Shown here in pieces: positions 2,546 to 36,329 of a stretch of DNA of 64,000 nt. The stretch is from Mizuhopecten yessoensis. Its lineage: Eukaryota. Made by a program: the position numbers and the translations under genes. How positions within the stretch are numbered: position 1 is the stretch's first letter; every line of letters begins with the position of its first letter. The stretch spans positions 1,171,659 through 1,235,658 of the forward strand of contig NW_018408881.1 of assembly GCF_002113885.1 (NCBI RefSeq). The letters run 5' to 3'. The notes under the pieces are model-generated. The model saw only the letters and a list, made by a program, of their open reading frames with translations, was not told the DNA's origin and made no database searches.

Positions 2546-2547
2546 GA

Positions 2548-2620: not shown

Positions 2621-2689
2621 ACCTTATCTCTTCTCTCCTTTCTAAATAACTTTTTTCTTCCTAATGCCTCCATTGACAATGCCTCACTT

Positions 2690-3691: not shown

Positions 3692-3899
3692 TTTGGTTTG
3701 TTTGTGTTTGACGACCTATTAACAGATATGGTAATTTAAGGACGTGCCAGGTTTCGGTGGTGAAGGAAAGCCGGAATTTCTTCGACCTACGGCCAGTACC
3801 CGGCGACTGCCCCATGAAGGTCAAGAACCTGCGACCCAGTCATGGAGGGCTAATGGTAGCAGAATGCAAGACGCCTTAACAGCTTGGTCACCGCGGCCC
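3692..3899 (-). mobile_element. SINE of a second family
   Basis: tRNA-like head GGGCCGCGGTGACCAAGCTGTTAAGGCG on the minus strand and a 3' tail shared with the dominant SINE; it interrupts the diverged copy of the ~790-bp repeat. Confidence 0.6.
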
Positions 3900-4659
3900 A
3901 TCAGAGGAGAGGGAGGATTACGAGGGGAATAACAAGACAAAATAAAAATAAAAAACGATCGGAAGAAAAAGTGAAATACGTTTGCTAATTTTAAAAATAA
4001 TAAGTTATTAGCAGGTTAAAACATCATCATTCCAGACGCAGACAGCATAATACATTTGAACTCTTACCTGAAGTTAAGAGTGAACGTCTTTGTATATCAC
4101 AAGTGTCGGCGATTGTTTCCAGTCATATCAACAATACACAGCCTAACATTCATACGGATGAAAAGAAGCTTTATATTTTTCATATGTTCATGTATATATC
4201 AGACTGTACAAAGATAAGAGGTTGTTCATACATTTTCATACATGTCCTGGCCTAAATTCGCTTTCGTGTTGTTTATGTTAGCTAGGTTGATGATATTGCA
4301 TCAGTTACATGCAGGGATGTAGGGCTACCAACTATGTTCAAAAAATGACTTTACCTAAACCCAAGGTCTCAGAGGACCAGGTTCATATTTGGTTAGTTGC
4401 ATGCAGGAACGAAGGGCTGCAAAGTTTATTAAAATAAATGAACTTCACCTTTATTTAAGGTCACAGGAGTAAAATACGTTAATTTTTATTCTAACTTCTT
4501 CTGAAAAATGAAATAATGATTTTTTTTATAGTTTTTGAATGGGTTCCCGGACATGGGAATACCAGTAATGATTGACTTTAAATTCATTTTACTGATATTA
4601 AACCATTTAAAACAAAATTCATATGATCGCTAATTGGAATCAGTGCTTTAACAACGAAT

Positions 4660-5095
4660 AAAACTCTATTAAACCTGAAATCGGTGAATGACGTCCTAGC
4701 TACAGAGAGAGGCGCCGATACGAGGTTGTCCTTACCCGTTTCCGGATGTGTCTTTCATACATTGATCATTGTTATTTATTGAAAACGTGAAGCCCAGTCT
4801 CAATACATTGCGTGTCAAGATACATTTTCAGTAAAACACTTATTATAAGATTGCGTCGACATTCGGTCAAATTCACAAATATATCTTAAATATCTTTCCG
4901 AAAGAAAAATGTCTCGACATGTTTTAAACTTTTTGAAAGCTCTTTTATCAAAATAATAGTCAACATAGCGCGATTTTCGATAAAATCTCCACGATTTATG
5001 GTTTTGTTTTTGCATATATTTTTGTAGAATATTTGTTAATGGCCTCTCCTGTGTTGATGGGCCTTTAAGCATGTAATGATAATGATGATAATTTA
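4660..5095 (+). mobile_element. Degenerate 3' end of an I/Nimb-like LINE
   Basis: Homologous to 44870-45330, with the same tail (GGCC...TGTTGATGGGCCTTTAAGCAT + TAA/TGA repeats). Confidence 0.65.
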
Positions 5096-5268
5096 TCTAC
5101 TTCCTCCTTCTGAATAAATACCCTTAATACTTGTGTATATATTAAAGTCCAGTCTTCCGTGAAACATGATTTTGTCGAGTGACTTTAATTTAAAATTTTC
5201 TGAATGTAAATAAAACTCTTGTAATTTGAATACAAATATTTTGTTTAAAAATATTATGACAATAATTT

Positions 5269-7690
5269 AGCTTGCTCAATTTCAGATGACCTCGCTATTG
5301 GTTAGTAGTTAGCAGACAAGTTTATAGATAAATAATTGTACACAGTTATTTCTAAAAGGGTTTAGACTTAGCATTACTTTGTTAGACAACATAGATACAC
5401 AGAGCACATAACGAGGGGAACAACAAGACAACGAAAAACGTAAACAGAGGTAAAATGTTCTACGATTCCTAATTTTAGAAAAAGATTGACAGGTTAAAAA
5501 ATCAGCATCATTGGCGATGCAGACAACGTATCAAATTGAACATTTACCTGTAATTAAATGTGAACGTCTTGGTATGTTGTCGCCGATTGTCCTCAGTCAT
5601 ATCAGTAATACACAGCCTACCACACTGGCACAACGCGGAAGAACAAACAATGTTTTTTAGCTTATTATGGTGAAACAGATACCTGAGGCGTATATACGGT
5701 TGATGACCAACCGCGGAAAACAAGTATTCATGCGGAAGCAAAGAAGCATAATATTTTAATATGTACATGTACCATGCATCTTAGACTGTACAATGATAGG
5801 AGGTTGTTCATACTTTTAAATATATTTTGTGTGTGGCAATTTGTAACTTTAGTTCGCTGTTCCGGCCTCAAACTCACTTTCAAGTTGGCAAATACACCAA
5901 CATATCCTCTCTCCGGGACACAAACACGCATTCGCAACATACATGGAGGCACGTCCATAAATGACCTTGGCTGTTAATAGGACGATGACCAAAATTTAAC
6001 AAAAACCGAAAAATTGTTTTCTATTTTTAACTAGGTTGATGATATTGCGTCAGTAGCATGCAAGGATGAAGTGCTAATCAGCCTGCTCAATTTCAGCTCA
6101 CCTCGCCCTGGGAGGACCGACCGGCCCAGTTATTATTTGTAAGTAGTTAGTAGACAAGTTGACTGATAATTTTTTTTAGAGTTATTTCTTAAAGGGCTTA
6201 GATTTAGCATTATTTTGTTAGACAACACAGATACACAGACAAAATAACGAAGGGAACAAGACAACGAAAAAAAGTGAACAGAAGTAAAATATTTTTGACA
6301 CGTTAAAATCAGCATCATTGGCGATGCAGACAGCATAATATATTTGAACACTTACCTGTAGTTAAGTGTGAAGGTGTTGCTATATTACAAGTGTCGGCGA
6401 TTGTCCCCAGTCATATCAGTAATACACAGCCTAACACAATGGCACACCGCGGAAGAACAAACAATGTTTTGTAAATCAGTATTGCGAAACAGATACCCGA
6501 GACGTGTATACGGTTGATGACCAACCGCGGAAAACAAGTATCCATACGGAAGAAAAAAAGCATAATATTTTAATATGTACATGTACCATGTATCTTAGAT
6601 TGTACAATGATAGGAGGTTGTTCATACTTTTAAATATATTTTGTGTGTGGCAATTTGTAACTTTAGTTCGCTGTTCCGGCCTCAAACTCACTTTCAAGTT
6701 GGCAAATACACCAACATACATGGAGGCACGTCCATAAAAGACCTTGGTTGTTAATAGGACGTTGAACAAAATCTAACAAAAACCAAATTGTTTTCTTTAT
6801 TATTTTAAACTAGGTTGATGATATTGCATAAGTAGCATGCAAGGATGAAGTGCTACTCAGCCTGCTCAATTTCAGCTCACCTCGCCATGGGAAGACCGAC
6901 CGGCACAGCTTTTATTGGTTAGTAGTTAGTAGACAAGTTGACTGATACAAATTTTACAGTTATTTCTGAAAGGGCTTAGATTTAGCATTATTTTGTTGGA
7001 CAACACAGATACACAGAGCAAATAACGAAGGGAACAAGACAACGAAAAAAGTGAACAGAAGTTAAGTATTTTTGACACGTTAAAATCAGCATCACTGGCG
7101 ATGCAGACAGCATAATATATTTGAACACTTAACTGTAGTTAAGTGTGAACGTGTTGGTATATTACAAGTGTCGGCGATTGTCCCCAGTCATATCAGCAAT
7201 ACACAGCCTAACACACTGGCACAACACGGAAGAACAAACAAGTTTTGTAGCTCAGTTTTGCGAAACAGATACCTGAGGCGTTTTTACGGTTGATTAACCG
7301 CGGAAAACAAGTATTCATACGGAAGCAAAGAAGCATTATATTTTAATATGTACATGTACCATGCAGCTTAGACTGTACAATGATGGGAGGTTGTTCATAC
7401 TTTTAAATATTTTTTGTGTGTGGCAATAAATTATCAAATTCAATGGAAGAATATGTATCTTTAGTTCGCTGGGCCAGCCTAAAACTCACTTTCAAGTTGC
7501 CAAATACACCAACATATCCTGTCTTCTTGACACAAACACGCATCCACATCATTCATGGAGGCACGTCCATAAATAACCTTGGGTCTTAATAGGACGTTGA
7601 ACAAAATCTTACCAAAAGTAAATTGTTTTCTTTATTATTTTAAACTAGGTTGATGATATTGCGTCATTAGCATGCAATGATGAAGTGCTT
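5269..7690. repeat. Tandem repeat, 3 units of about 780-830 bp; diverged partial 4th copy at about 3560-4330
   Basis: Unit start AGC(T/C)TGCTCAATTTCAG at 5269, 6080 and 6859; the ORF track shows duplicated peptides here. Confidence 0.92.
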
Positions 7691-9332
7691 CAAAGTTTTT
7701 CAAAACAAGTAGTTGTATGCTTGGTTTAGGGGTCTGTTCTGTTCATATGAATAGGATTCATCCATGAATAGGCCTACTGTATACCACTGAATGATCGTAT
7801 GGAGCGATGTTTGTGGGACCCCTGCAGAATCAGGGCTGGTTTCTTCCTCGTCTTCTGTTTAGATAAGCAAATCAAAGACCTGCTGTACGATGGCCAGCAG
7901 CAGTAATAAAGAGTTTACCATATTTAGTAGGTACATGTCATGGCAACTGCTTCAGAAAACAGCACTTGCCAGGTTAAAATGTCCGCTTAACTAGAGCGGT
8001 TGTTTTGTTACGCATCTAAGTGGCCCATATCAGCCATTTCGCCAAACGTTGACACAATTAACATTCTGCAATGATAACGGGTGATTTTAACACAGTACAT
8101 GTGAGCTCTATTCATTTACAGGGATACATGGCTTCATCTTGATCGTTATAAGAAGGTGTGCTATACAACCTCGTCCTGCTTGGTCTCATTGGATTGGTAT
8201 CAGTCTTTTTGGTTTGGTCTGGCATGGTCTCTGGAGTCGGACCGAAGGCTATTTTTTTATTTAATTAGTAGTTGATGTCTTATAAATCCTTATATGACTC
8301 TATATGTAGCCGTTTGCTGAATCGATTATCTAAAGAACTCAAATACAGTGTGTAGATCATTTTGAGTGATAAGGAAATATGAACTGAAAGTACGGTGGGT
8401 TATTATTATTTTTTTTGGGGGGGGGGGTAACATCCTTAGCTTAGATCTTCGTAAGACGGGGTCTAGATACAACATCGAAAAAGTGAGAGAGAAATATCTA
8501 GATCATACCAACATCAGATCAATTTTCAATGTCCAATGTCGTCCAAGCATAAGACACTAAACACGAAACCCTAGATTCTGCATTGAACACAACTAGTCGC
8601 CTCTTAATTACGATATACAGAGGGATACAGCGGGCCTATTTTTTTCCAAAACCAGCAAGGGTCCCATTGGAGTGTAAGGAGTGAAACAGCCAACGTTGTA
8701 AAAGAGCAAAAATGCACATTTGATGATACTTTTTTATCACACACCTTTTATCACTATGACAAATAGTAAAGAGAACAGTAAAATTAACATATTGTTGTTA
8801 CAATTTGTATCAACGTAGCTGCAACTGAAGTTAAGGATAACAGATAGTGGTACAGCAAATCCTATACAAAATATGATTTTCCCAATAATAATAATAATTA
8901 TGATATAAAACATTTGATATAGTTAACATAAGCCACTCTAAAACGCTTTACAGTACAAAGAGTATACAATTAGCATATACATTAATCAATACAATTTTTG
9001 GGGAAATCGCAGGAGCTGCCTTATCAGGCGCTAACTACTAGCCCTTTGTCACCTGGCTAATATCTCCCTATGTGTGTATGCCTGCGTATGTGCTCGAGAT
9101 GTATTGTGATGGTTTGTAGTCGGACCGTGCTTCAAACGGTATCTTTTATAGTGCCACCTCACTTGAATGCTTCAACACAAATACCGCAACATACACCCCA
9201 GACCATTTTATACTCCCCTGGGTTGTTGGATTTGTGTGGGCAGGAGAAAAACACTTTCTCTGATATTCCATTCGTACGACGACTTCGAAGATCAAACCCG
9301 GTCGCCTGCGTGAAAGGGCGATGTGTTAATCA

Positions 9333-17363: not shown

Positions 17364-18026
17364 TTACAGAGATACAATGGCTGGAGCATCAGCCTCCCTC
17401 TTCCTCAGAGAAACAATGGCTGGAGCATCAGCCTCCCTCTTCCTCAGAGAAACAATGGCTGGTGCATCGGCCTCCCGCTTTTTCAGGGAAACGATGGCTG
17501 GAGCATCTGCCTCTCTCTTCCTCAGAGAAACAACGGCTGGAGCATCAGCCTCCCTCTTCCTCAGAGAAACAATGGCTGGAGCATCAGCCTCCCTCTTCCT
17601 CAGAGAAACAACGGCTGGGGCATCAGCCTCCCTCTTCTTCAGAGAAACAACGGCTGGAGCATCAGCCTCCCTCTTCCTCAGAGAAACAACGGCTGGAGCA
17701 TCAGCCTCCCTCTTCTTCAGAGAAACAACGACTGGAGCATTAGCCTCCCTCTTCCTCAGAGAAACAATGGCTGGAGCATCGGCCTCCCGCTTCTTTAGAG
17801 ATACAACGGCTGGTGCAGCGAAGGCTACAAAGGGGAAAAAAGATCGATTATTTGAATTTAATTTATATTTTATTTTAATGAATTTTAAATAATAAGTTAT
17901 CAGTATAATAGCTTAAAATATATTTATTAAGTATAAAGAGTTAGTATTTTTTTTTAAAGCAATTGTAAACTCACCAAAAGTACTCAGACACAGCACGGCC
18001 ATGAACGAAATCCACTGAATTTTCAT
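17364..18026 (-). CDS. Secreted multi-copy peptide precursor, 170 aa; CDS complement join(17975..18026, 17364..17824)
   Basis: Exon 2: acceptor TTTCAG (AG 18039-18038), ATG 18026, MKIQWISFMAVLCLSTF, phase-1 donor GTGAGT at 17974. Exon 3: acceptor CTTTTTTCCCCTTTGTAG (AG 17826-17825), reading AFA-APAVVSL then 11 x (RKR or KKR)-EADAPA(I/V)VSL (one unit EANAPVVVSL), TAA at 17366-17364. 52+461=513 nt, in frame. Confidence 0.9.
17367..17815. repeat. 39-bp coding tandem repeat, about 11.5 units
   Basis: Unit CAGAGAAACAA(T/C)GGCTGGAGCATCAGCCTCCCTCTTCCT; encodes the peptide repeats on the minus strand. Confidence 0.97.
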
Positions 18027-18129
18027 GTCTGATTGTTCTGAAACAATGAAACGACACAGTATAAAGCACAACCTCGTTAATCAATCCACTCAATATTTAA
18101 GGACAAAGTCCCTACTCTTAATCGTCTCA

Positions 18130-18428
18130 AATGGTAGTTGTTATTCCCTGCTTACTGTTCAGCAATTAAGGGGAATGGCAACACCTGGTTCACCCGTTGT
18201 CAGTATAATGGAATCGGGCGGAATGCTGTGATGGCTGCCTTCGGCATGGTATATCAGTGAGATGGCACTATAAAGTCGGCATCAGATCCGCGCTATCACA
18301 AGGAGGCAATAACACCAATATACACAGTCTCTTGCACACATACACACATGCATGCTTACACAACACTTACGGAGACACGTTCTTGAATGACCTTGGCTGC
18401 TACAAATGGGACGTTAAATAAAATAAAA
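18130..18428 (+). mobile_element. SINE (dominant family) in intron 1 of the precursor gene
   Basis: Same core and AATGACCTTGGCTG...GGACGTTAAA tail as the other copies. Confidence 0.8.
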
Positions 18429-20591
18429 CTTATCACGTTCACAGTCCAGATATATGTATTTAAGCTGGGGAAGATGGTGGCTAGATTATCAAATCTCCCC
18501 TTACTAATATTAAAAGTCAGTGATACACATTTTAACGCACGCGTTTTTGAGGTATATTTCTTTCTCGGTGATGGAATTCAAAGCTACATATATATATATA
18601 AATTTAATTTCTTTTTGCGGAATGGAGTTAAATTAATTTGATCCTGGTATCACTCTACTGGAATAGCGATATGGTTACATTAAAGTGATCGATTGTTTCC
18701 GGTTTCCGGAAAAATAAACAGAGTATCGATAATGCTTGCCTGTTATAACCAAAATTTTATGAGTGTGACAATATAAAACTAATCGTTAATGTCACCTATA
18801 TTTCAATAATATGGCAGATTATAATCTTCCAGAAAAAAAAACATATGGTATTAAACATGATACTCATTTAATTCCTATTACATGTATTATAATTCTAAAG
18901 CCTTCAGATAAAATTATTCAACAGTTGCATCTAAAAAACGTCGTATTAAAATTAAGGCTTTGCACCATTTGGCATAGGTAACTCAAAGATTTTTTTATTA
19001 TTTTTTATATTTTCTGTTAAGTTTTGTTTACAAATAAATGTTATACATCGTGTAATTATACAGTGTCGTGTATGTGGCAAAATCACCACTTTTTATCGTC
19101 GCTTTATATAAATAGGAAATGCACTTCAATAACTTGAGTTATTAATTGATATCTAGCAATGCGTAAATGACGTTATTGATAAAACTTGCCGCAACGAATA
19201 TAAAAGTGTGGTTAACCCTTCATCTGCTCAAAACCTAATATCGGCAAGTAAGAATGTTTCATATTACAGTTTTGCAACAAAGATATTGAAGTGTTTGTTC
19301 CAAACAGTTTTTGAATTCGAGATTTCATTATTAATGGTGAATTATATTTTACGTTGAATATTTATAACAATCCCAGCAACAAACATAACAAATACAAAGC
19401 GACTTTGAATAAAGCGGTACTCAATTTATCACATTATTTAGAAGCGTAAGAAATTACAAATGTACCTTGTGAACAAAAGATTAATTCATTTGTAATATTG
19501 GATACTGGTTTACCACACCATTCTTCCTTTGACTATAGTTAAAGCATTATGAAATAAAATGTTTGTAAAGCAAAATGTATACATTGTATATACTCTTAAT
19601 ACAAGTATCATGAATTATCGTTATACTTTGGATACATATTAGATATGGTTGTTTTGTTTTAAAAGAATCGGCATGGAAAACCGACCACATCTTGTTTATC
19701 AAAGTTTATCAAAAGAATCTTGTTCATAGGAAATTTAACAAAAATGTGTTGGTGAACGAAAAAATATATGGAATTAATTTGGCCTGAGCTAATTGCTTAA
19801 ACTAAAACTATTAATTTATTATAAACCTGTACATCTTGTTAACATTAATATTATGTTCCAGTTCTTGTGTTTGTACACAAATTAACAATTGAAACATTTA
19901 GGAACTAAAGAGCTTTTGACAAAAGTTCGCTGTTCTCTGCAATACAATACTTTCATTTTAAAAAGCTTGATCGCTTTACAAATACAAAACTAAAATTCGG
20001 AAACTTATGTTCAGGATTAATACAAATGTTTAGTAAAAACCCAAACAATTATTGCGAAAGTTTAACTTCTGTGTAAGAATTTTTTTTACTTTTTTGCATA
20101 ACCTAGATTCTTGAATTATAGGTGACATTGTTGCTGCTTCATGCATAGAAAACAGGTTTTTAACTCGACGATAGGCAGTTTTAACAAACTCTTTTACACA
20201 ACTTTGAACGTTCTTGACACAAAATAAAAAAAACCCAGTTTAAATGTAAAGATATAAATGAAAACTCCTATAGCATCATTAACAATTTAAAATACAGTTT
20301 GTATAGATAATAAGACAATTTAATTGAATTCATTTTTGCAATTGCAGTACTGTTAAACCGAATTTCATTATTTACTGTCATAGTATAATAATATAACCTA
20401 AACTTCGGCATCAGTCACTTGGCTACTGTTTGCCTTAGTTTAACAAAATTTTAATTATTTATATAAAACATATATTGATTTATTTACAAATTTAAAATTA
20501 GTTCATGATATATTTACATTCGTTCAGTATATACATACATAAATAGTACATTAGCTCATTCAAATTAATTTTTAATTTGGAAAAGTCTTAC

Positions 20592-20686
20592 CTTTTCAAG
20601 CTGGTAGTGTCTTTATCTTGACAAAATTGTCGGAGTGAAAAGCAGGGATTATAACGATTTTACTTAGATCCGCATCAGCTTTTATA
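20592..20686 (-). promoter_or_regulatory. Probable TATA promoter and non-coding exon 1 of the peptide precursor
   Basis: TATAAAA at 20686-20680 (minus) and a consensus donor AAG|GTAAG at 20592/20591, about 60 nt after the expected TSS (about 20655). Exon 2 begins with an acceptor, so an upstream exon is needed. Confidence 0.65.
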
Positions 20687-21552
20687 GGCAATTATCAGGT
20701 ACATGTCATCTTGGGTTGGTAAAACACATTATTTATGCAGTTTAAAAGAAACCATTAAGCATCACCTTCAAGTCGACATCACTTATCATGAACCAATAAA
20801 AATATTCCAAGTGATTTATGTGAATGTCCATGCCATCAGACAATGCCCCGCCGGACAGGTACATTAATGTTGTTTGATAACCACATGTGACTAAATTATT
20901 AAGATTTAGCACACGAATATAGGATACACGTTCCTGGCATTGGTAATTAATTCTTCGAAATTTCGTAATAATGCTGAAACCGCTTTCCAAGAAAACAAAA
21001 ACATATATATATTGCTACTCTTTCCTAAAAGAAGTAAAGGGCGCCGTCTATCCTGGTAAACATCTTTGATATTTTGTCACCAAACGTTTTTAAGCTGTTT
21101 ACATAGCTCTACCATCAAATGGATGTAGGTTAAACTTGTTGTAGTGTCGATTAGTTTTATTTTACACGAATAACTGTCTTTCTGTTTGAACTGGTGTGCA
21201 TGTTACTATTTTAACAGTTTGTAACGTAGTCTTATAAAGTACAACAATTGTTCTCATCACCTGTCGTTGATTTTGAAGCACTGCAATAATCTTTTTAATT
21301 TTTCGAAGCAATTTAAATGATAAAAGATAGATGGATATGCATATCAACACTATGAAACAACCTGCATGTACTTCCATAGCTCCATGAACCTGTTATTCAT
21401 AAACGCCCTGAATATGACCTCTGAAGTTTTAAAAACCTTACATATATATATATATATACATAAATATGTATTTTCATTTTCATACAATAATATCAAGTAC
21501 TCTCAGCATCTCTATCAATTCTATAAGTTTGAATTCATGCTTGTTGCTAGGC

Positions 21553-22880
21553 TTGGTTTGGTTTTGGTTTAGTTTTGTTTAACGTCCTATTAACAGGTAA
21601 TGTAATTTAAGACGTGCCTCCATGTGTGAAGTGTATGCGGGCTTGCGTGTGTATATGTAGGAGACAGGGTATGTTGGTGTACCTGCCTCCTTGTGATAGC
21701 GCGGATCTGATACCGACCTTAGAGTGTTATATATCACTGAAATGTCATGCCGAAGGCACCAAGCACAGTATTCCCCCCGGTCACATTATACTGATAACGG
21801 GTGAACCAATTGTTGCCATTCCCCCGTAATGCTGAACGTTAAGCAGGGAATTACAACTACCTTTTTAGCCCACCACCATCTGATTATGGGCTATTCAAAT
21901 CGCCCTGCGTCCGTGGTCCGTCCGTCCGTCCGTCCGTCGTCCGTCCTTAAACAATTCTTGTTATCACTTTTTTTCAGGAAGTAACAGAGGGATCCTTCTC
22001 AAATTTTATATGTAGGTTCCCCTTGACCCCTTTTTGTGCAACTTTTGACACTGAAGGGTTGTTATGGCTATTTCACAGGAAGCAAAAGAGGGCCCTTTCT
22101 CAAATTTTATATGTAGGTTCTCCTTGGTCCTTAGTTGTGCAGGGCAACTTTTGGGACTGATCGGATAAACAAGATGGTCGACAGGCAGCCATCTTGGATT
22201 TTGACAGTGAAAGTTTGTTATCGCTATTTCTCAGGAAGTGCTGGAGAGATTCATCTCAAATTTAATATGTAGGTTCTCCTTGGTCTGTTGTTGTGCATGT
22301 TCAATTGTGAGACTGATCGGATATAGAAAATTGCCGAAAGGCCAATATTTTGGATTGTGACATTAAAGATTTATTTATCACTTTTTCTCAGGAGGAAATG
22401 AAGGGATCTTTCCCAAGTTTGTTATGTAGGCTCTTCTAGGTCTGTGGTTGTGCATATTGAATTTTGAGAATAATCAGATTAACAAAATGGACGACAGGCC
22501 ACCATCTGTGATTGTGACATTAAAGGTTTGTTTTCATTATTTCTCAGTAAGTACTGGAGGGATCTTTCCCAAACTTGTTATGTAGGTTTCCCTATGTCTT
22601 TCGTTTTGCATATTTACTTTTGAGACTGATCCGATAAACAATATGGCCGAGAGACAGCCATCTTAGATTTTGATAGTGAAGGCTTGTTGTCACTATTTCA
22701 CTGAAATGCCATGCCGAAGGCACCCAGCACAGCATTCCACCAGGTCATATTATACTGACAACGGTTGAACCAGTTGTTGCCTTTTCCCTTAATGCTGAAC
22801 GTTAAGCAGGGAATAACAACTAACATTTTTTGGACTTTGGTATGTCCCGGCCTGGGGACAGAACCCATTGCCTTCCAACA
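21553..22880. mobile_element. Composite: SINE(-) 21553-21865 / HINE-like element with about 156-bp internal repeats 21862-22697 / SINE(-) 22697-22880
   Basis: TTTTAGCCCACC start, GTCC microsatellite and repeated ATGTAGGTTCCCCTTGG...CAGCCATCTTGGATTTT units, flanked by SINE cores. Confidence 0.75.
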
Positions 22881-25800
22881 ATTGCTGAACCTTAAAATAA
22901 ATGTATATGCTTTGTTTAACTAAGGACAGCAAATTTGAATAATTGCCTGTCTTTTAATTTTAATGTATAGTTGGATGTGACGACGTAAAATTTAAAGAGG
23001 AATTGAAAAGCAATCATCGAACTGTATTAATTGTTCTGTAAGGAGTTAATGAACAAACTCTGCTTTCAAGCCGTCATTGTTTTCCAAGCATAAACAGGGG
23101 ATAAACAGAAAAATCCAAACACCTCCCCTCCCACTTACTATATGATTGGATAGAGCAATGAACATTGAGGACCTGCAAAAATTACTATTTATTAATTCTA
23201 GTCTTTCCAATGTACTCTGCTTAGCTTAGAGTACATTGTGAAAGACTAGAATTAATCCACTGCGCCTATTCTAACACTTTGCATAACTATCCTAGTATCC
23301 TTCCTCAATTACCATTTCTTTCCCTGGGTTATCCATCTTTGCAGGTCGGCGATTGAGAAATGAATATCGTACGAGGCCACTTATGTAAAAACCCGTGCAG
23401 AATTTAGGATTCGATTTTGTACCCTCTACTAGGGGAAACAAAAACGACCAAAATAAATCTGCTGCACCCATTACAATATTTGGGAAGTTAATATTTCTCT
23501 CTATTTCTAACATAGCGCGTTGCTTGGCTGTATCTCACTCTAGGCTGTAGTGAAGGATGTTCTCCCAGGTGACGAAGGCAATGGGTTCGTCAGTATTTTT
23601 ATTCAACAAATATTTTTATTTTTATAATATTATTTTGTGGTAACATACACTTGGGGATCTGTCGGTGTCTCCCTCTCGTCCTCTTATGACCCTGACTGTT
23701 GCAAGGACGTTAAACCACAAATATGTACAAAAACACATTGTAAACAAATACATAAACCACAGTGTCATACACAAGGTCGGGAATTTAAAGCTATACAAAA
23801 CACAGCATGTTGTTCTGACGCAAAATGAACCACGGAACGTAATACTTCATGAATATTCCTTGTCTACTTTTCAAGTTGTACGTGTCATTTCTCACGAGAA
23901 CGTGACGTTTTGAAAAAATCAGTAAGGCGCCGCTCCTTGTTCCGAGACCTCCCTTACCGGACTTTGATAAGCGATAAAGATTGTTCAACCTCATGATACA
24001 TGTAAACAGAAGGACTATTAATGATAGTTATCAAATTTAATGTAAACAGCAGCTAAAGTGCATTTACGGCATCAAACGTTGGCATTTGTGAACATCGGTA
24101 GGCTTGATATCCTATCACAACTACGTTTAATAGCCAATCATTTTCTATTTTATCTTATCGTTTAGATTGCAAATTTTCTGTATCGCACATGTCGAGAAAA
24201 TAATTGCAGATATTACTTCCACATGGTAAAACAACATTTTAAAACTGAAAACGAAATAAATTCAATTTTTCTTAGGGGAAGTTGAAGTACGTTTCTATAT
24301 GTATTTAAGCCTATATTTCACACATATTTTACATGTGTTTAAAAGAACTATTTAATTCTTGAAATTTCAAGTATTTGCATTTATTTCGTTCAAATGCAAA
24401 ATAGAAACAAAATGATACATTAACACGGGCCATTATTATTATTTCCAACTGCGTATAACTTAAATAAGCCTGCACCTAAGTTAACGCCAATGAATTAATT
24501 AAGGACGTATCATCATCCACGTAAACACATGTAATGTCGATTAATTGGCTTGCTTTATGGGGAAATCTGACAGATAAAAAGGGTTCCTAATATGTACCTG
24601 GAAAAGAAAATTCGAGAATTTGCCGACGTTTGTCACGAACATGGCTTGGCTGACCTCTAGGATGTACAGGTCGACGTAGAACCCTGAATATTTTTAGTGA
24701 TAATCCCAACTTTTTATATTTTATTTGAGAAGGTTTAACATTACTTGAAAGTATTTCAACATTATTCAAAAATGCCTGCTTACCATTAAGCATCGTTTTA
24801 AGCTTCGAATGTAGGAAATATTAACTACTTTTAAGTGACAAACAAACAAACAAACAAATATGATATAAAACAAGTAACATTCTAGCCAGAGAATCGTCTC
24901 TGAAAGAGCGGTCGCATGTAAACATATCCTATAAATAATGTCGACATCATTATTCTCTTGTCAGATCATGTCGACAATGTTTAAAATTAGGTTGACATAT
25001 GTATTTCTGAAGTCGAATTTTGATGGCAGAAATCTGCCACCGTTATAATACAAATAATAGAACAAATTATCTGAGAAATTGTAACATTGATGATAGTTTA
25101 TAAAGCCGTCATTAAAATACTTATAAGTATTGCCATTACAGCAACGTTAAATGATTTTTTATACTGCTTCAACACAAATACATAGTAAAAGTATATGAAA
25201 TGTTATATCTTCACATACTACCCAGTTAAAATGGACCTTTCTATTCACACCGTTGATTGGATTTACAAGTTTATACAAAATTTATATGAAGAGACTGTAG
25301 AATCAGTGCTTGCATAGGTACTCTTTTGTAACATGAAATATGGTATTTACATGTACATAACTACACAATTGACAACTTATTTTTTGTTTGGACATCGGAT
25401 CAGATAATTGCAACAAACGGCAGAATTGCGCTGAGCAACCGATTGAAAATGGCAATCTGCCTTGTTATCAAGCGAGACGACATTTGAACAAGGTGTAAAT
25501 ATTTCGCTACTAGTTCTTATGCTGCAACATTTCGTCGTTTTACTTTTTTTTTAAATGTAATAAATGGAAAATTAAACGTTTTTTCCGTTGAATACCATTT
25601 ATGGTTCACTGATATGGAAGAATATTTTTTCACTCGTGCTTCCGATTCGTGAAGATATTGATATTCTCCCATACTCGTGAAAGATATCTGGAATTCAACG
25701 GAAAATTATTAAATATTCTCTGTAGGTGAGTTACTTAAATTCTGTAATACTGCCTGAACACATATCATGAGCTGCATTGGTATATATGTTAATCGAAATT

Positions 25801-26506: not shown

Positions 26507-29500
26507 ATGATGACCGGTAGCGTAGTATTGGTGGTATTTGTGTGTGCTAGGGCAGTGTTAGGCCTGCCTTATCTACGTAAAGCAGACCATTACAATGATT
26601 CTGGGCCGCTCTTAAAGTTACCAGATTTGAACAAAGAAGTGTATTATCAACATATGAAATTACCTCTGCGTACATTTGTCGGAGAAAAGGTTTGTATATC
26701 ATCACCATTCTTGTGATAACAAATTCATTACAAATGGTCCGTATCAAATTAGGGTGTAAGTATAATCGAATAACGATCTTGGGTATATCTGCATGTTTTT
26801 GAATGGTTTTACCATATTTTACAGAAAATTGAATATGGCTGTTCGGCTTTTCCTCTGAAGGCAGACGAATACATTGGTAAGTATTGCTTACTTTATATTT
26901 CAAAAGATTTTACTGTGAAATGAAAGTTTTATGTAATTGCCAATTTTACAAAAATAACTCGTGTCTATGTTTTGAATTAAGATATAGTAATGATTCAGAA
27001 TAAATTCTAAAAAGTGAAATGAGTGTCATGCATTTGTTTTGTGTGGGTTTTTTTCTGTTTCGTAGTTAATGCAAATAAAGATAGATTGTATGTTTTATAT
27101 ATTGTATATATAATTACAACATGTGTGTATAATATCAGCTATACATAACTTATGCTTTTATGTTCATTTGCCGCTGTGAACTAGAACAGCTTACAACGTT
27201 TTATACATTATTACAGCCTGTGTGAAAACTACATGTTATACATAAATACAGCGCGTGTACAAAGTAGTCCCAGACTTGTACTGCTCGTGAAAACAATAGG
27301 TTTGTACTCCGTCCACCAGTCGGCAAGTCCGCCCAACCGGCAGTGCATCATTTTTTTTCTTGGCCATATCTCGGAAACTTTGTCATCTTCAATTTCCAAA
27401 TTTTGTATGTTAATTACTCTTGAGATGATCAAGTTTTGCGTATAAAATCATGTCGTATGTTCAGCTCTATACTATACAAATATATATAGTGTGTCCAATT
27501 CGATACTGAAATCTGATGTTATTTGTTATATATTAACTACGTGTTCTGTACATAACTACCAGTATTGTTGGTATTATATGTTATATACAGGAAATGTTAA
27601 CCACGTGTTGTGTAGGTATTGTATATTATATTAACAACTACATATTGTAAGGATATTATTTGCTATTTGTAATATCAGTCTGTATAGGTATTATCTTATA
27701 TACACCTTCCTCGAGTAAATTTTACTCGCTTGTATAGTGCATCTATTACTTTATTATACATGTATGTCTTTCCTCTCTAAGTCATGAGTCAATTTTAATT
27801 GTTATTTACAGTCGAGTATTTGCCCATCGGAGAACGAGATGATGTTTATCACATAACAGTCGATGTATGCGACGTCCCCTATGATGAAGCTCCTATTTGG
27901 TGAGTTGTTCTGTCATTTGCAAATGAGAACTTAGTGATGTTAATATTTATGTTAATATGCTAAATGGAATATCTGTAGATGTTGTTAGATCTTGGTGTGA
28001 AATAGAGGTAATTATTTGCAAATTTTGAGCATAACACTTACCAGCCCGAGAGCCCCCTATAACGTCAAAGAGGAAGTGACGTCACTGAATATTAGTATAG
28101 CTTTATCGAAATCTCAATATTATCTGTATTATACGTACATGTAAGCTATACAAAACAAAACAAGAACAAGTAAATTCACAACTGCAGAACAAAAAGAGAC
28201 ATGTTTGGAACAGTCGGAAGTATGATTCATTATTATCATGGTGTTGATATTTCGAACATATCTATTTTGGTTTATTTATTTATTCATTTCATATATTATT
28301 CGCCGAATATTTCAGTAAATTGCCATCAAGCAATTTGGATCCGTACTTTCTCGTCCAATTTAAACATGGTAGATGCTAAATTTTCCACGTGTCACCCCGA
28401 TTCCTTATATATCTCACCCCTGCAGGTCGGGATCGAGAAAAGAATGCACCTGCTGTTGACCACTGCCATGTATCGTTCGAGACTCATGTGGAAGCTCCCT
28501 TCAGAATTGGGGATTTTGTTTTGTACTTTTTATTAGATGACACGAAAGCGACCAACAAAAATTCTGCTGCACTCATTACAATATTTAGGATCTTCCTTTT
28601 CTTTCTACTTCTAACTACCTTTTATTTCCTAGCGTCTTGCTTGGTTCACCCGTTGTCAGTAAAATTTGAACGGGCGGAATGCTGTGCTGGGTGCCTTCGG
28701 TATGGTATTTCAGTGAGGTAGCACTATAAAGTCGGCATTAGATCCGCGCTATCACAAGGAGGCAACTACGCCAACATACCTTGTTTCCGGTTCACATACA
28801 CGCTTACACAAAACACATGGAGGTACGTCCTTAAATTACCTTAGCTGTTAATAGGAAGTTAAACAATATGAAACCAAACCAAACCGAAAATGTCCCCAAC
28901 CCATTCACCACTCCTTTTTCGTTTCTTACCCGTTTTATAGAGGTACAAAATACAATACATTTTGTTTAACTATGTTTCAGGGAATGCGTTGACCCGACGC
29001 ACGTTTGTAAAGATCACAAGAGAGAATTCCTGTATTCCTGGACGAACGGGGCCCCCGGTTGGACCCTACCAGAAAGTAAGTCACCGACGTACTGTTATGA
29101 ATTCTTTTTCGTGAAGGATTGTTTTTTACTTTAATTTGCGGGGACACTCATTTGAAAAATTAAATTTCCTCAAACAATAATTGAAAATATAATCATAACC
29201 AATATTGAAAAAACATCCTCGCTTTAGCAAGTTTATGTATTCGCAAATAAAGAACGATATATTTTCGAAATTAACTGCACTGAACAAAAGGTGATTTAAA
29301 GAGTATAATCAACAACGATTACAACCTGTATTATAATATTCTTACTTTATCCGATACATTGAAATAAAATTGTGTTTAGTCTAAACCATTTTGTAGGATT
29401 TGTATGACGGGAGATAACAGATAACACTGCTGTTGCCTTGCCTTTTCTTCTTCTTACTTATGTCGATTTTTAGTTGAAATATATTTTTTCTTGATGGCGC

Positions 29501-32500
29501 TGTTTAATATTTGCTTTTTCACCTTTTCATTCATTCGAATGTATATAGTCAATAAAACACTCTATTAAAAATATTTGTACTACATACTTGTTAGGTGGTC
29601 ATGACGTCATGACATTGTGACATTATAATAATAAGAAGATAGCACTAACCGATGATTGCTATTGAACTAACGAAGTACTACTTTCAATTTTAACAAAAAC
29701 TGTGATTGAAATAAAAGAATGTATCATCATATTGTGTGAATCTTGAAAACTACAATCGTGAAAATCTTTGTTTTATTTTATATATCAGATACCGGAATAT
29801 ACACCGGTAATAAACCCCGGTATGTTATAATACAAGTCCATGGACGTGACGACATCTCAGGTAAATTCACCTTTGGATAATTTAAATAAGGAAAGTAAAG
29901 GATACAATTTAAAACGTGCATCCCAATGCAATTACACAATGTAAGTTATACATGTGTGTAAACATAGCATCGAGGTCGTTCAATTTCCCTGAGCATGTTT
30001 AGGTAAAAATTTATGATGTACATTTCCGTATACGCTATATACACGATAAAATGGGGCTTCGTCTCGATATGGTACTATGTACATGTATATATGTACACAA
30101 GACAAAAATGTTAATACCGAAGTTTGTCCACAGCATATGTTGTTAGGGCCCCATATAGAGGATGCGGGTGAGCGATACTAATTCGAATTTTCGTCTGTCA
30201 CAATAAAACAAGGTATCAACTGACCAAAGGTCAAGGTCACTGGGTCAAAGGTCCAGGTCAAATTTTGTGTCTTCCCTGATGAACATTTTGTTATGACATT
30301 ATGAAGCAAAGATGGTTGGAATTTAACAAAGAGTCAGCTGACTTAAGGCCAGGGTCACTGGATCAAAGATTAAGGTAAAATTCAGTATCTTTTCACTGGG
30401 GAACATTTTGCTATGACACTTTGAAGCAATGTTGGTCAGAATTAAACAAGGAGTCATTTGACCAGAGGTCAAGGTTACGTGTTCCAAAGGTTCAATGTCA
30501 AGGTAAGGTTTTGTATTTTTCACTGATGGACATTTTGTTATGATATTATGAAGCAAATTTGGTTGGAATTGAAAAATGAGTCAACTGACCAAAGATCAGG
30601 GTCACTAAGTTAAAGGTCAAGGTCATTTGGGTCCAAAGGTCAAAGACAAAGTTGATCTCTTACTTTGACCCTGGCTTTTGATGGGGGAAGTATTTAAGGC
30701 TAACAAGTGAGTATTGCACCGGTATTTAAATTTCTGTAAGCCCAGCAAATATGGAAGTGGAAAGAAACAAGACTCACATCATAGTACATGTAAAATGTCT
30801 ATTTTGCTTCCTTGCAAATGTTTTTGAAGTCCAAATGTCAAACTTCAAGCTCAGCTATATGGGCAGATTGCTTCTTGATGATTACGGGGGATATATTGCC
30901 ACAAGACGAGGCCCTTACTGACCTGTCAGTGTTCTAGTTTCACCTACGTTGACCAAACTTGCTAAAGTTTTAATGTATCTTGGGAGGCATGAGTGTCGAA
31001 TTCTAAATTCGGGTCTCGGGTCCCACTATATAAAGCGATATGGCCCTTTGTTAATATACAGGATTTTTTCTATTGTCTAATAAGGGGAGACATATGTTTT
31101 TGTTCACAAAACCAAAATTCTAGTTAAAAAGTGTGACACATTTATTGAGAGAGTACACAGTATATAAGAATACGTATTCAAGATAAATTCTTATACATGT
31201 GCAGCTTTCTTTTTAATATCTTTCGACAACAATATGGGATATGCGTCGATTCTGTTAATAAAAGAATGATTATGTACGCATGTTATGTACATGATAAATT
31301 TGTAATCCAAGTTTCCTCGAGTTTTTTCTTCTCGTTTTCAGAGGAACGTGTCTCGGACTTCGCACACATGCGTTTGAAAATCCGGACCACCCGGTGTGTA
31401 TCACTCCTACTAACTATTAATCAAACACACATTACAAAATGTTAAACAACTTTTAACACATTTTCTTATAATTATATAAACGTCACTCATTCAACATCGA
31501 TGTCTACTTTGTGTTATCCTCTTTGTTATGATGCCCAATAATAGACAATAGACTGTTACTGATATTAACCCGACAACAAATATATTTAATATTAATAATA
31601 CTTTCATAAAATTATTTTTATCCGCTGCTATATTTATACTAAGTAAACATAATTATCGAACTGTGCTATCTTGTTTCCACCAGTCCCCGACTAGCTGCAG
31701 CTGTTAGTAGATACGCCGGCACCGGCTCTATACCTCCTCACGTAGAAAGTAAGTATATTATCATGTACATATTGATGAATAATACGTACGAATAATCACT
31801 ATGATCACATGATGTGATGTATTTTCGTATACAAATCCATATATAATAAACTAAAATTTGCAATGGTGTTTTTTTTTCAAAAAATAAAACAAAGTTTCAT
31901 TTTGTTGAATTATTGGTGATTGAAAGTCTTTCAAGGCGTATTTTCAATATCGCCGATATATGACATGAATGAAACAGAATGCACTTTATCAGAACTAGGT
32001 GATCATTTTTGAATAAACGAATTTTAAGATGAACTCAAATAAAATATAAAAGAATAACAATAAAAAATAATTTTAAAAAGCAGATATCAAAATTGTTAAA
32101 ACAGAGTAACACAGGGAAGTTTTTCACTTACACCATTAAAAAGTACATATAGAATAGTATCAGGTGTTCCGAATTCAATTAAAAAGACAAGCACTTATCT
32201 AGGTCACAATTATATAATATGATAACTTCAGTTTTGTTGAGGAAGGTACATGCACTGTGTTTATTCTACCTTTAGATTTCACCGTTGACACTGCGTGTGT
32301 ATGGAACAGGACAACACCTACGCCTATATTAGCTTACGGAATACATACACACGGTAGAGGTCAGTCATTATGTACCTGACGTCAAGTACACATACAGGAA
32401 ATCTTAGGGACGACCTCTTCATTCAAGTTGACGTGTGTCTTTTACTTTTACGTTTGTTTTATTTCATTTCAACAAAGTTTATTCATGACGTTGTATGAAT

Positions 32501-35500
32501 TGGATCGAACAACAGGCTATGCCTATATCAGTTTTCTCCTGCATGCATTTGTATTAATCAGCATATATATATTATAATTTATAGTGAAACGAAAGATGTA
32601 AAAAAAACAGACAACTTATATATAAAACAGATATCAATGTGCAAGTCATGTGGTAAAGGTAAGATAATTCTAACTGCTTCTGAAAGTTCACAAGTCAAGC
32701 TGTGCTCCTTCCTGACCTCACCGGAGTAATGAGTGAGTTTAAGTCATATTCCTTTACTAGATTCTCCCCGGGAGTTCAAAATCCACACAGAGTGACTCAT
32801 AGATAGTTGAATATTCGGCTTATTTAATTAAATATTATTAATAAGCTATGTCAATATTGTATGGTATATCAATATTCACATTAATAATACGTTAAGAATA
32901 TAATTATACAACTACTTGTTATTAATTACAAAATACAAGTCCATGTTGATTTAAGGGTGAGTATATTATATTAACGTTTGTTTGATAACATTTTTAATTT
33001 TATGTTTTTATCGACAATTTGTCGGCCCTAATGACTAACACAGATTGGCTGTTGACCATATAATGATAATAACAAAACTCTTCATTACTGCATTACCTGT
33101 TGTCAGTCTAGGTAATTTGTAATACTTACATATATATATATATATATATATATAACATTTTTATAATGTCATGTATTTACTGAAATCAGCTCCTGCATAT
33201 ATTACTTTTATTAAACATATACAACTGGTCTTAGTTTTTATTTACGAGAGTGTCAATGTCTTTATAATTGTGACTTGTTTTAAAACAATAAATCCATATA
33301 ATATCATCGTACCAATGTCGAGATTTTGGGTTTAAGTTAATTTTAGATCTAAAATTTAGTTAAGGATATGCAGACAAATACACAAGCATTTGAATATGAC
33401 GTAATGACAATTGTTATTTTAAAATGGAAAATTTAAGTTGTATTGAACTTCATGAGAACTCGTTTAAATTATGAATTAAGATCGATATCAAATTACAGAC
33501 ACGATTCTCACAAAAACTGTAACGTCCTAAGAGGTTTCTCCGCAATGATTTTAGGTGTGAAATGGTTAGGGCAATGCCAATAATATTTTGACGTAAGGGA
33601 TCGGGCCGTTGCGGTTTATGGGCAAATCGTCTGCCCCCACCCATCCCTCCTGTTTCATTTTATACTCTTTTCTAATATTAGGAGTTGCATTGTCCGGTTA
33701 CATTGTGAGAAAAGGCAAATGGATCGAGATTGGACGTGGTGATCCGGTGTACCCACTGGTAAGTTAGTGTGTCGATATCAGAATATGTGGCATATAGTAT
33801 TGATAGAACAAAATATGAAAAGGATTCAATGTTATTTTAATCTTAGGTGTATCAAACTTTCACTATTTATTCCATGTACGTTTAAAATTGTATTTGCATC
33901 GGTTGAACACGGAACATTTATTTCGCCTACCAATGGAGCGTGTACATACACAATCTGTCGAATAGTTATTAGCTGTTAGCTTCTTCCTCCAACTAGTAAC
34001 TACCAGTCCGTCTTGAAACGTTGCAACACATTAACATGTACATATTTTATCTGAAAAATGTAATTCTATTTTTTCAAAATTGATTTATGTTGTTGAAGAT
34101 ACAAAACGGAGTTGATTTACTGTATTCGTAGTAAAATCTATAAAATAAAATTGTGTATCATTATTACAGACAATGTTTGACATCACAGAGAGAAATATTT
34201 GGCTTCAACCCGGAGATGTTGTAGTAAGTACTGAATGTTTATTTCAATAAAGCAGCACCAGATTTTTTTTGTATGCATTAACATTATGCGGTCGAGGGAA
34301 ACAGTTCATCTGGTGGGTCCCAACTCCGAGGGAAAATGGGTTTGACTGTTGACTGATAAGGCATGAAACAACTGTTTTGTTACTTGATCAATGAAAAACA
34401 AAAATTTGAGTAAGTCACAATCCAACATTTCAAAAAAAAACAAAAAAACTGGAACACTTATAGCTAGTGGTAATGAATATGTAGGTTTTGCACCACTCCG
34501 TGTAAATTCAGGGGATACCGTCTCACCGACGCAGTCTCATATTAATATAATGTAACAAATCAATGTTTACTAAACAAATAAACAACAAATTAATGTCCTT
34601 TCTAGCTAGTGGTAATGAATGAAAAATGTTTCATGTAAACCATATCTGACTTACAGCATGGAATTTTTGTGTACGTAGTCCTGCATAAAAACCTTTGAGG
34701 TGCTCATTCAATGTTTGTACTTCTGCCGACTCAAAGTCGGTTATTGGTATTTTCTTTGCGTCACATAATGCGGCTAAAATTATGACGGCCCCCTTTATAA
34801 TATTCTTCGTGTTAGCAGCGTCATGGTTCTCAATCAGTTGAGGTAAGGATTCATCACTGATTTCTTCAAACCTGTCCATGTCGAATGTACCGACAGACGA
34901 CCGTCAACAATCCAGTACCAAAAACGCTTGATCATCGGGGTGCTTGTAATTATAGGTGCTTTCGATTACCTAACACGTGACCAGTCAACAGTCGTAGGGT
35001 AGCAAGCACCAGTTCATCACGTGACCAGTCAACAGTCGTAGGGTAGCAAGCACCGATTCATCACGTGACCAGTCAACATTTTTACGGTAGCACACATTAG
35101 CTATAGTTCGTTTGGTGAATTGTCTGGGAAACAGTTGAAATTGATTAATATGCATTTATATAGCGTGTCAGGTAACAATTTATACTGTTTCATATAATCC
35201 TTCCCCTATGGTGTACTGTGAAATCAGATATTTCGTGGGGCCCACATTTCGTGGTTTCCCGAAAAATAATTCATGAGGACATGAATTCATGGATTACAAG
35301 TACCCACTAATACGGAGAATTGCTTTATGTCAAACTTGAATTACTCAGTAGACCTTTGAATTCGTGGAGGATTACCCACGAACTCAACAAAATTAAAGAC
35401 CCTTCGAAAATGAGTGATTTCAAAGTATTTCAACATTTGCTTAGAAACACATTAGATGTGTATTTTCATTCCTTTGATAAACAGTATATCTAATGTGTCC

Positions 35501-36329
35501 TTACGTGATGAAACGGCCATATAGTGAAGTAAAAATGTAGGTTTTGTTCAGCTTCTTGCATTGAAAGTTTGAAGTGTTTAAATTGGTGCTTCCTTTTTAG
35601 GTATATCTACTTATTATTTGAATGATTTAATTTTGCATTTATCCTGGTTCCTTTTATTTAATTCAAATTTACGCAACATATGCCTTGTTATCCACCTGAA
35701 TTTAAGGTAATGTTTCCAATACATTGTATGTTCAGTGCCAAATGTATCAAATCTGTGTATTACGTATCTAGGCAACGAGATGTACCTACCGCAATACCGG
35801 AAACACACGAATCCAGATGGGGTAAGACTGTTAAAAGATTTCTCTCTGTAATGTAGGCAAGGTCAAATGAGAAATGTTTGAATTGAAAACATATTTGAGA
35901 AAATGCTTTAAAATATTGATATGTTGTCACTACGAGTTATCCATACCTCGGTACGTTGGTAGTGGATAAGTGTAATTTTGTAGAAGACCAGTGTAAGTTT
36001 ATAGTACACCAGTGTAATTTTTAAGAGGACCAGTGACAGTATATCTGATCTCTTTGTTCACTTGTGATCAATAAAATATGTATATAATTTATTGACTCCA
36101 TATTACTTATATTTTCAGGTTCAACCACGTCAATGAGATGTGTAACTATTTTTTGTATTACGGTGTTTCTTCCGATTCAATTGCTGAGGCCAAGTCACTA
36201 GCGTGTTCAAGAGAGGGGGGAGGATGGGACCAACTGTTTGACAACATCCCAGCTGACGCAAGCGATCCTAGTGGCGACACGGAACAGTCTCGCTTTGTCA
36301 AAAAGTACCATCTTACCAGAAGTTACTGA
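26507..36329 (+). CDS. Divergent monofunctional peptidylglycine alpha-hydroxylating monooxygenase (PHM)-like copper monooxygenase, 360 aa, secreted; 12 exons: 26507-26689, 26825-26876, 27812-27899, 28981-29075, 29789-29860, 31342-31393, 31684-31748, 32276-32359, 33682-33758, 34170-34223, 35772-35821, 36119-36329
   Basis: All introns are GT-AG with compatible phases; total 1083 nt. Signal peptide MMTGSVVLVVFVCARAVLG. PHM-colinear motifs: EYGC, DVYHITVDVC, FLYSWTNGAPGWTLP, YVIIQVH, SIPP, LAYGIHTHGRG, SGYIVRKGKWIEIGRGDP, PGDVVATRC, NEMCNYFLYY, LFDNIPADA. Eight PHM core Cys are retained. AATAAA at 36525-36530. Confidence 0.92.
28641..28890 (+). mobile_element. SINE (dominant family, 5'-truncated) in PHM-like intron 3
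   Basis: Core plus AAACC tail. Confidence 0.8.
30110..31125 (+). repeat. HINE-like element with about 120-bp internal tandem repeats
   Basis: Four units containing TGACC...GGTCA(A/G)GGTCAC at about 30217, 30335, 30455 and 30582; 3' end ...TTCTAGTT. Confidence 0.55.
34631..34879 (-). mobile_element. Crypton-like (DUF3504-associated tyrosine recombinase) N-terminal remnant in PHM-like intron 10
   Basis: RFEEISDESLPQLIENHDAANTK...TDFE...LNEHLKGFYAGLRTQK matches my recollection of CryptonA/KCTD1/ZMYM-type N-termini; a 45-bp tandem repeat with CACGTG lies upstream (34973-35080). Confidence 0.6.
35215..35427. mobile_element. MITE
   Basis: Termini TACTGTGAAATCA...TGATTTCAAAGTA. Confidence 0.55.

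What the first reader, a model, noticed from the sequence alone, without database searches (positions are those of the whole stretch)
17364..20686. Hidden 3-exon prohormone-like gene inside an apparent minisatellite
Seen: the 39-bp repeat read on the minus strand and spliced to a 52-nt signal-peptide exon gives MKIQWISFMAVLCLSTFAFA-APAVVSL followed by 6 x EADAPAIVSL, 4 x EADAPAVVSL and 1 x EANAPVVVSL, separated by 7 RKR and 4 KKR sites. Unit differences are mostly synonymous (GCT/GCC/GCA, AGG/AGA/CGG, TCT/TCC) or conservative (K/R, I/V) in this frame, and the stop falls exactly after the last core. Known: multibasic sites are cut by furin/prohormone convertases. I do not recognise the core as any described molluscan neuropeptide family. 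Repeat masking and ORF finders would miss this gene.
Basis: partly seen in the sequence, partly recalled or inferred. Interest (0 to 1): 0.88.

Follow-up and report, generated by a model that had tools for sequence, protein, structure and literature searches.

The report
Scallop multi-peptide precursor beside altered enzyme
The apparent repeat is a real, spliced Yesso scallop gene, already predicted but never named or studied, for a secreted precursor of twelve near-identical short peptides; it sits head-to-head with an altered copper peptide-modifying enzyme that may, or may not, tailor them.

Summary
The gene is real. Both introns are seen as exact joints in assembled contigs from two studies (runs probably RNA), at depths of 470-8,300 against 3-11 in the introns. 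Repeat variants are mostly synonymous. It is not hidden: the identical 170-aa protein is PY_T16696 of the Patinopecten (Mizuhopecten) yessoensis gene set, listed unnamed in a 2019 proneuropeptide dataset (PMC6425005). It is not among the 63 ganglion neuropeptides of PMC5996578, and no paper searched names the core. Layout: signal peptide plus 12 unamidated cores between tribasic sites with EA-DA spacers, as in alpha-factor or apidaecin precursors. The only look-alike is a hemichordate protein sharing L[RK]KR-EA-x-A. The next gene, 5.8 kb away and divergent, is an intact 12-exon PHM-like copper monooxygenase. It keeps the CuM ligands but has lost H107 and the substrate-carboxylate anchors R240 and Y318, while the cores lack the glycine PHM needs. 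A functional pair (animal RiPP-like unit) is plausible, about 0.3, but co-expression and conserved linkage could not be tested. The enzyme lead came from earlier notes on this same window; the scan has not reported it on other DNA.

The parts
20680..20686 (-). TATA box of the precursor gene
   Evidence: sequence; about 30 nt upstream of where the X6 spliced contig begins, 20650
20592..20650 (-). precursor exon 1 (non-coding; 5' end approximate; one X1 contig runs on to 20954)
   Evidence: joint 18037/20592 in X6 and X1
17975..18037 (-). precursor exon 2: ATG at 18026, most of the signal peptide
   Evidence: also picked out by the splice-site scan
17364..17824 (-). precursor exon 3, coding part: end of signal peptide, 12 cores, 11 tribasic sites, stop at 17366-17364
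   Evidence: joint 17824/17975; same protein as PY_T16696
16605..17363 (-). probable 3' UTR; polyadenylation signals at 16916, 16659 and 16610
   Evidence: a spliced mRNA would cover 0.24-0.31 of the stretch searched, like the 0.25-0.39 word shares of runs X6-X14; end not mapped
26507..36329 (+). PHM-like copper monooxygenase gene, 12 coding exons (26507-26689, 26825-26876, 27812-27899, 28981-29075, 29789-29860, 31342-31393, 31684-31748, 32276-32359, 33682-33758, 34170-34223, 35772-35821, 36119-36329), 360 aa with signal peptide; an acceptor at 26474 suggests an unmapped upstream exon
   Evidence: expression not tested
27812..27899 (+). enzyme exon 3: Tyr-His where PHM has His107-His108 (CuH site)
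   Evidence: HH in 35/35 natural PHMs
32276..32359 (+). enzyme exon 8: Gly at Arg240; His242 and His244 kept
36119..36329 (+). enzyme exon 12: Met314 and Asn316 kept, Phe at Tyr318
   Evidence: N-x-Y in 47/47 natural PHMs

Best explanation
A tissue-restricted, strongly expressed secretory gene that amplifies one short peptide twelve-fold. Shown: gene structure, splicing, coding constraint, precursor layout. Inferred: signal peptidase cuts after residue 20 (A-F-A at -3..-1; the next site would put Pro at +1). A furin or prohormone convertase cuts after each [RK]KR and carboxypeptidase removes the basic residues. N-terminal trimming of the acidic spacer stops at the Ala-Pro bond, so all copies converge on the heptapeptide APA(I/V)VSL, which is exactly what the first copy is once the signal is removed. 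The free-acid, hydrophobic peptides most likely act as an exocrine or paracrine signal from a non-ganglionic tissue. In this reading the neighbouring PHM-like enzyme is a diverged paralogue that is not needed for these peptides. Processing into short peptides (shared with rival 1) I put at about 0.85; the no-tailoring version at 0.5.
For: Joints and depth contrast; zero exon reads in two raw RNA runs from other studies, so expression is restricted. Synonymous bias. Stop directly after the last core. Conservative R/K exchange only at the first basic residue. Hydrophobic N-terminus. The same spacer logic is described for alpha-factor and hymenopteran multipeptide precursors (PMC3415428). The Saccoglossus protein keeps the L[RK]KR-EA-x-A context around a different core. 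Absent from the ganglion list. H107A-type PHM mutants keep under about 5% activity (PMC12164859), so the neighbour may be a poor catalyst.
Against: No peptidomics, tissue identity or receptor. The exact mature end is not fixed: 10-, 8-, 7-, 6- and 5-mers are all possible. No orthologue was found in other bivalves. The runs that hold the joints are only guessed to be RNA. The neighbour's losses match the cores' lack of glycine, which this reading must treat as coincidence.
Confidence: 0.5

Rival explanations
1. Two-gene RiPP-like unit. The precursor is cut as above, and the divergently transcribed PHM-like enzyme, in the same secretory pathway, uses its intact CuM site to abstract a hydrogen from the non-glycine core: side-chain or C-alpha hydroxylation, or oxidative trimming of the C-terminal Leu. 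The product is a modified peptide metabolite.
For: Head-to-head, 5.8 kb apart, with no other multi-exon gene detected between about 2 and 48 kb; the pair is flanked by otopetrin-like copies. The enzyme frame is intact over 12 GT-AG exons and keeps His108, His172, His242, His244 and Met314. It has lost Arg240 and Tyr318, which hold the substrate's C-terminal carboxylate (PMC12164859). The cores have no glycine. The precursor promoter shares more 10-mers with 24001-25000 than with any other 1-kb window (8 against a mean of 1.0; 0/300 shuffles).
Against: Adjacency in one genome only; linkage elsewhere untested (no contig on record for the Saccoglossus protein). Enzyme expression untested. His107 is replaced by Tyr, which may cripple catalysis. 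The promoter signal is weak: 46 of 203 other 300-nt queries reach 8 or more matches somewhere. My rough estimate (own assumptions: 5-10 PHM-family genes, about 100 multi-copy precursors, about 25,000 genes) gives a 4-8% chance of one such neighbour pair in the genome.
Confidence: 0.33
2. The protein is not cut to free peptides but works as a secreted repeat polymer (beta-solenoid, amyloid- or surfactant-like), or the released acidic-head, hydrophobic-tail decapeptides self-assemble as a coating, like fungal repellent peptides.
For: Single-sequence AlphaFold2 gives a confident all-beta repeat fold (pLDDT 85, pTM 0.80). The cores are beta-prone. Very high expression suits a bulk product.
Against: [quoted passage not shown] No PDB match at E<=0.001. 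The Saccoglossus look-alike is modelled as one long helix, so no fold is shared. The strands would bury basic residues.
Confidence: 0.12
3. A transcribed minisatellite whose reading frame is incidental.
For: No close homologue in 5.8 billion or 1.84 billion proteins; a plus-strand frame is also open over the repeat.
Against: Two spliced joints, a signal peptide built across an intron, synonymous bias, no indels in 11.6 units, and the stop at a unit boundary.
Confidence: 0.03

Closest known systems
PY_T16696, Patinopecten (Mizuhopecten) yessoensis gene model, in Datasets S2/S3 of De Oliveira et al. 2019 (PMC6425005)
   Same: Identical 170-aa protein.
   Different: Carries no family name there and I found no discussion in the main text; no processing, tissue or neighbour analysis.
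Yeast alpha-factor, bee apidaecin and ant hymenoptaecin multipeptide precursors (PMC3415428)
   Same: Signal peptide, tandem cores, basic cleavage sites followed by E/D-A dipeptide spacers.
   Different: Unrelated core and no pro-region. The second dipeptide is followed by Pro, which blocks DPP-IV-type enzymes (own knowledge), so trimming probably differs.
Saccoglossus kowalevskii LOC102803574 (XP_006817504.1)
   Same: Repeats of L[RK]KR-EA-x-A followed by a short, hydrophobic, Pro-containing, unamidated core.
   Different: Core YPVL; 11-aa unit; the predicted model has no signal peptide; E only 1e-4, so homology and convergence cannot be told apart; neighbours unknown.
Peptidylglycine alpha-hydroxylating monooxygenase (PHM), for the neighbouring gene
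   Same: Collinear profile matches over the catalytic core; CuM ligands, His108, His172, Asn316 kept; an intron just after the His-x-His motif shared with many animal PHM loci; eight mature Cys fit four of the five rat disulfides (pairing from memory).
   Different: His107 to Tyr, Arg240 to Gly, Tyr318 to Phe; no PAL domain.
Eukaryotic multi-core RiPPs: fungal Kex2-processed repeat proteins, plant BURP copper cyclases (PMC12164859), sponge proline-rich macrocycle precursors (PMC10945851)
   Same: Secretory multi-core precursor; for fungi and plants, copper-type oxidative tailoring. A fungal look-alike found here lies 3 kb from a tyrosinase gene.
   Different: No DUF3328 or BURP enzyme. A PHM-derived tailoring enzyme beside its precursor did not turn up in the papers searched. 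No modified product is known.

Membership tests
multi-copy prohormone-type precursor (alpha-factor/apidaecin layout) | N-terminal signal peptide | tested here: met
   hydrophobic residues 3-20 and A-x-A site; SignalP not available
multi-copy prohormone-type precursor (alpha-factor/apidaecin layout) | repeated cores separated by basic convertase sites and X-Ala/X-Pro spacers | tested here: met
   11 tribasic sites each followed by EA-DA or EA-NA
multi-copy prohormone-type precursor (alpha-factor/apidaecin layout) | spliced, expressed transcript | tested here: met
   two studies; library type is a guess
multi-copy prohormone-type precursor (alpha-factor/apidaecin layout) | processed peptides detected | not testable with these tools
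   needs peptidomics
described molluscan neuropeptide family | core matches a named family | tested here: not met
   unnamed (open-access library only; supplement files partly cut)
described molluscan neuropeptide family | neural expression | tested here: inconclusive
   absent from the 63-gene ganglion list; tissues of the runs are coded
canonical PHM (neighbour gene) | type II copper monooxygenase core | tested here: met
   top four of 3,514 six-frame pieces are its exons, collinear with the profile; exon 9's best PDB hit is PHM, E 0.14
canonical PHM (neighbour gene) | CuM ligands His242, His244, Met314 | tested here: met
canonical PHM (neighbour gene) | CuH ligands His107, His108, His172 | tested here: not met
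   Tyr at 107; HH in 35/35 references
canonical PHM (neighbour gene) | carboxylate anchor Arg240 with Tyr318 and Asn316 | tested here: not met
   Gly and Phe; N-x-Y in 47/47 references; the Arg tally is circular because my search pattern required it, but its role is in PMC12164859
RiPP-type precursor plus tailoring-enzyme cluster | precursor and modifying-enzyme genes adjacent | tested here: met
RiPP-type precursor plus tailoring-enzyme cluster | linkage conserved in other genomes | tested here: inconclusive
   no orthologous locus retrievable
RiPP-type precursor plus tailoring-enzyme cluster | co-expression | not tested
   the single read-laying run went to the precursor's joints; promoter word-sharing is only a weak hint
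RiPP-type precursor plus tailoring-enzyme cluster | enzyme modifies the core | not testable with these tools
   needs assay and MS

The most novel reading that the evidence does not exclude
An animal RiPP-like two-gene unit: a bivalve re-purposed a duplicate of its neuropeptide-amidating copper enzyme (PHM), dropping the glycine-carboxylate anchor and one CuH ligand, to oxidise short non-glycine peptides mass-produced from the adjacent precursor, with L[RK]KR-EA-x-A as a processing motif also seen in a hemichordate.
Probability: 0.3. Interest if true: 0.85.

Novelty: new variant of a known kind. Interest (0 to 1): 0.55.

Why it matters
Alone, the precursor is an abundant orphan scallop peptide with a clear prediction for mass spectrometry. 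If the neighbour acts on it, this would be a clustered peptide-tailoring pathway in an animal and new chemistry from the PHM fold, whose only established peptide job is glycine hydroxylation for amidation. Even if unlinked, a natural PHM that keeps CuM but lacks His107, Arg240 and Tyr318 bears on the open question of what the CuH site and substrate anchor do in this enzyme family.

Tried and rejected
Homologue searches with exon 3 found only the Saccoglossus protein; the other profile hits were unrelated repeats, RFamide precursors or fungal proteins. Pfam hits on the repeat are compositional noise. ESM Atlas feature searches were blank. The metagenome scan for precursor relatives was blank. 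Single enzyme exons were too short for Pfam and mostly for the PDB (the toxin B-subunit rows are chance matches at E 0.2 or worse), so I fetched natural PHM sequences by motif and built a local profile. P0083 proved to be a probably fungal repeat precursor near a tyrosinase gene and is not a relative. The AlphaFold beta-solenoid was rejected as a known artefact. Promoter word-sharing was downgraded after a second null. Reads at 18130-18400 come from a dispersed repeat in intron 1, not from this gene. No paralogue of either gene lies in the window.

Full report
Observation. The 39-bp array at 17367-17817 has 11.6 copies, 90% matches and no indels. On the minus strand it is the last exon of a three-exon gene with canonical splice sites, a TATA box at 20686-20680 and a 513-nt coding sequence ending at 17364. 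The product is 170 aa: a 20-residue signal, a 7-residue first core and eleven 13-residue units, each a tribasic site, an acidic spacer and a hydrophobic core. Ten of 14 distinct unit variants are synonymous, against 26% expected (p=0.0006; 0.007 for transitions only). Units homogenise, so these p-values are approximate.

Expression. Nineteen runs from eight studies hold the stretch. Nine guessed-RNA runs hold 0.25-0.39 of its words, about the share a spliced mRNA would give. I laid reads on 17745-21000, leaving out most of the repeat because the tool turns away long repeats. Runs X6 and X1, from different studies, both show the joints 17824/17975 and 18037/20592, at depths 1,943 (both joints, X6) and 8,324 and 470 (X1), against 3-11 in the introns. 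Two raw RNA runs from other studies have no reads on any exon, so expression is restricted. Strand, tissue and 3' end were not determined, and the library type of X6 and X1 is a guess.

Identity. The same protein is PY_T16696 of the Yesso scallop gene set, present without a family name in the clustering files of PMC6425005. The organism is therefore Patinopecten (Mizuhopecten) yessoensis, and the gene was not missed by annotation. It is not among the 63 precursors found in ganglia by homology and de novo prediction in PMC5996578, and a full-text search for the core found nothing relevant. Protein searches returned one look-alike, Saccoglossus LOC102803574, which shares L[RK]KR-EA-x-A around a YPVL core. 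With E = 1e-4 on a repeat, this may be convergence.

Processing (inferred). The layout is that of alpha-factor and hymenopteran multipeptide precursors: endoprotease, carboxypeptidase, then removal of E/D-A/P dipeptides (PMC3415428). Here the second dipeptide precedes a proline, which stops DPP-IV-type enzymes (own knowledge). Aminopeptidase trimming that halts at an X-Pro bond would turn every internal copy into the same heptapeptide that signal peptidase releases from the first copy, so APA(I/V)VSL is my best guess. No core has a glycine, so none can be amidated in the usual way.

The neighbour. Earlier notes on this window pointed to a PHM-like gene, and I tested that. Twelve GT-AG exons at 26507-36329 (+) give an uninterrupted 360-aa protein with a hydrophobic N-terminus. 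A profile from 26 natural PHM sequences was run against all 3,514 six-frame pieces of the window. The top four hits, and six of the top nine, are these exons, in collinear order; single-exon E-values are modest (0.007-0.03 for the top four). His108, His172, His242, His244, Met314 and Asn316 are kept. His107 is Tyr (HH in 35/35 references), Tyr318 is Phe (Tyr in 47/47) and Arg240 is Gly (the references were selected for this Arg). Arg240 makes the salt bridge to the substrate's carboxy terminus, with Tyr318 and Asn316 as secondary contacts, and H107A retains under about 5% activity (PMC12164859). An intron just after the His-x-His motif is shared with many animal PHM loci, which points to duplication of a native gene. 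It is not a canonical PHM, but it looks like a maintained one.

Are the two linked? They are divergent, 5.8 kb apart. A splice-site scan tuned on the enzyme's own exons finds no other multi-exon gene from about 2 to 48 kb, and otopetrin-like copies lie on both sides. The enzyme has lost the anchor for the C-terminus of glycine-extended substrates, and the cores lack glycine. Promoter word-sharing peaks in the intergenic stretch but is weak. Against a link: one genome only, no co-expression data, possible loss of activity, and a chance of some such neighbour pair that I estimate at 4-8% from assumed gene counts. I give the functional pair about 0.3. Papers searched describe animal biosynthetic gene bundles and sponge peptide precursors but no PHM-derived tailoring cluster.

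Structure. AlphaFold2 folds exon 3 as a confident beta-solenoid, with no significant PDB match and only shape matches to other predicted repeats. The hemichordate repeat folds as a single helix. This is the artefact described in PMC11795689, and I give it little weight.

Limits and handling. Joined models were built only inside scripts, to check frames and once for a local comparison against this window. My exon-3 queries omitted the final Leu. The N run at 61757-62629 was left untouched.

Verdict. A real, already predicted, unnamed multi-copy peptide precursor of a familiar design, with an unusual enzyme next door. Interest 0.55; new variant of a known kind.

Noticed in passing
window 21-1035 (-), 48048-49961 (+), 52368-54003 (+): Three otopetrin-like copies flank the gene pair. 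The middle one is fragmented. The right one is split over two overlapping ORFs (52368-53555 and 53503-54003), a frameshift or an assembly error.
   Followed up: partly
window 20592-20954: In run X1 the exon-1 contig extends about 270 nt upstream of the TATA box: an upstream start or a divergent transcript.
   Followed up: no
window 24224-24975: Candidate TATA at about 24932 and several 10-13-nt words shared with the precursor promoter; three of the window's eight GTCGAC sites lie at 24670-24970. Possibly the enzyme gene's promoter.
   Followed up: partly
window 1956-2645: ORF resembling a Tc1/mariner transposase remnant (by eye).
   Followed up: no
window 21908-22699, 37609-38308, 39865-40555: Arrays of 145-156-bp units, two beside GACG/CGTC microsatellites, like bivalve pearl/CvA-type elements (family from memory); one lies between the two genes.
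   Followed up: no
window 18129-18427, 21553-21866, 28642-28889, 47752-48001: Dispersed repeat of about 250-300 bp with many copies, abundant in RNA runs; one copy is in precursor intron 1.
   Followed up: partly
window 5296-7689: Degenerate tandem duplication of a roughly 800-bp segment.
   Followed up: no
L001 10001-16476: Probably fungal repeat precursor (basic site, AEDAEA-type spacer, IPFY core) 3 kb from a tyrosinase gene in GCA_020747065.1; a possible fungal RiPP locus.
   Followed up: no
L014, L037, L043, L053, L074, L089 and similar: Long intronless PHM-containing ORFs of 700-980 aa in metagenome contigs, probably PAM-like proteins of microbial eukaryotes or bacteria.
   Followed up: no
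PMC6425005 supplement file 5: A GLWamide precursor (apparently cnidarian) has KR-EANAP before its cores, matching the second unit here; probably convergent processing logic.
   Followed up: no
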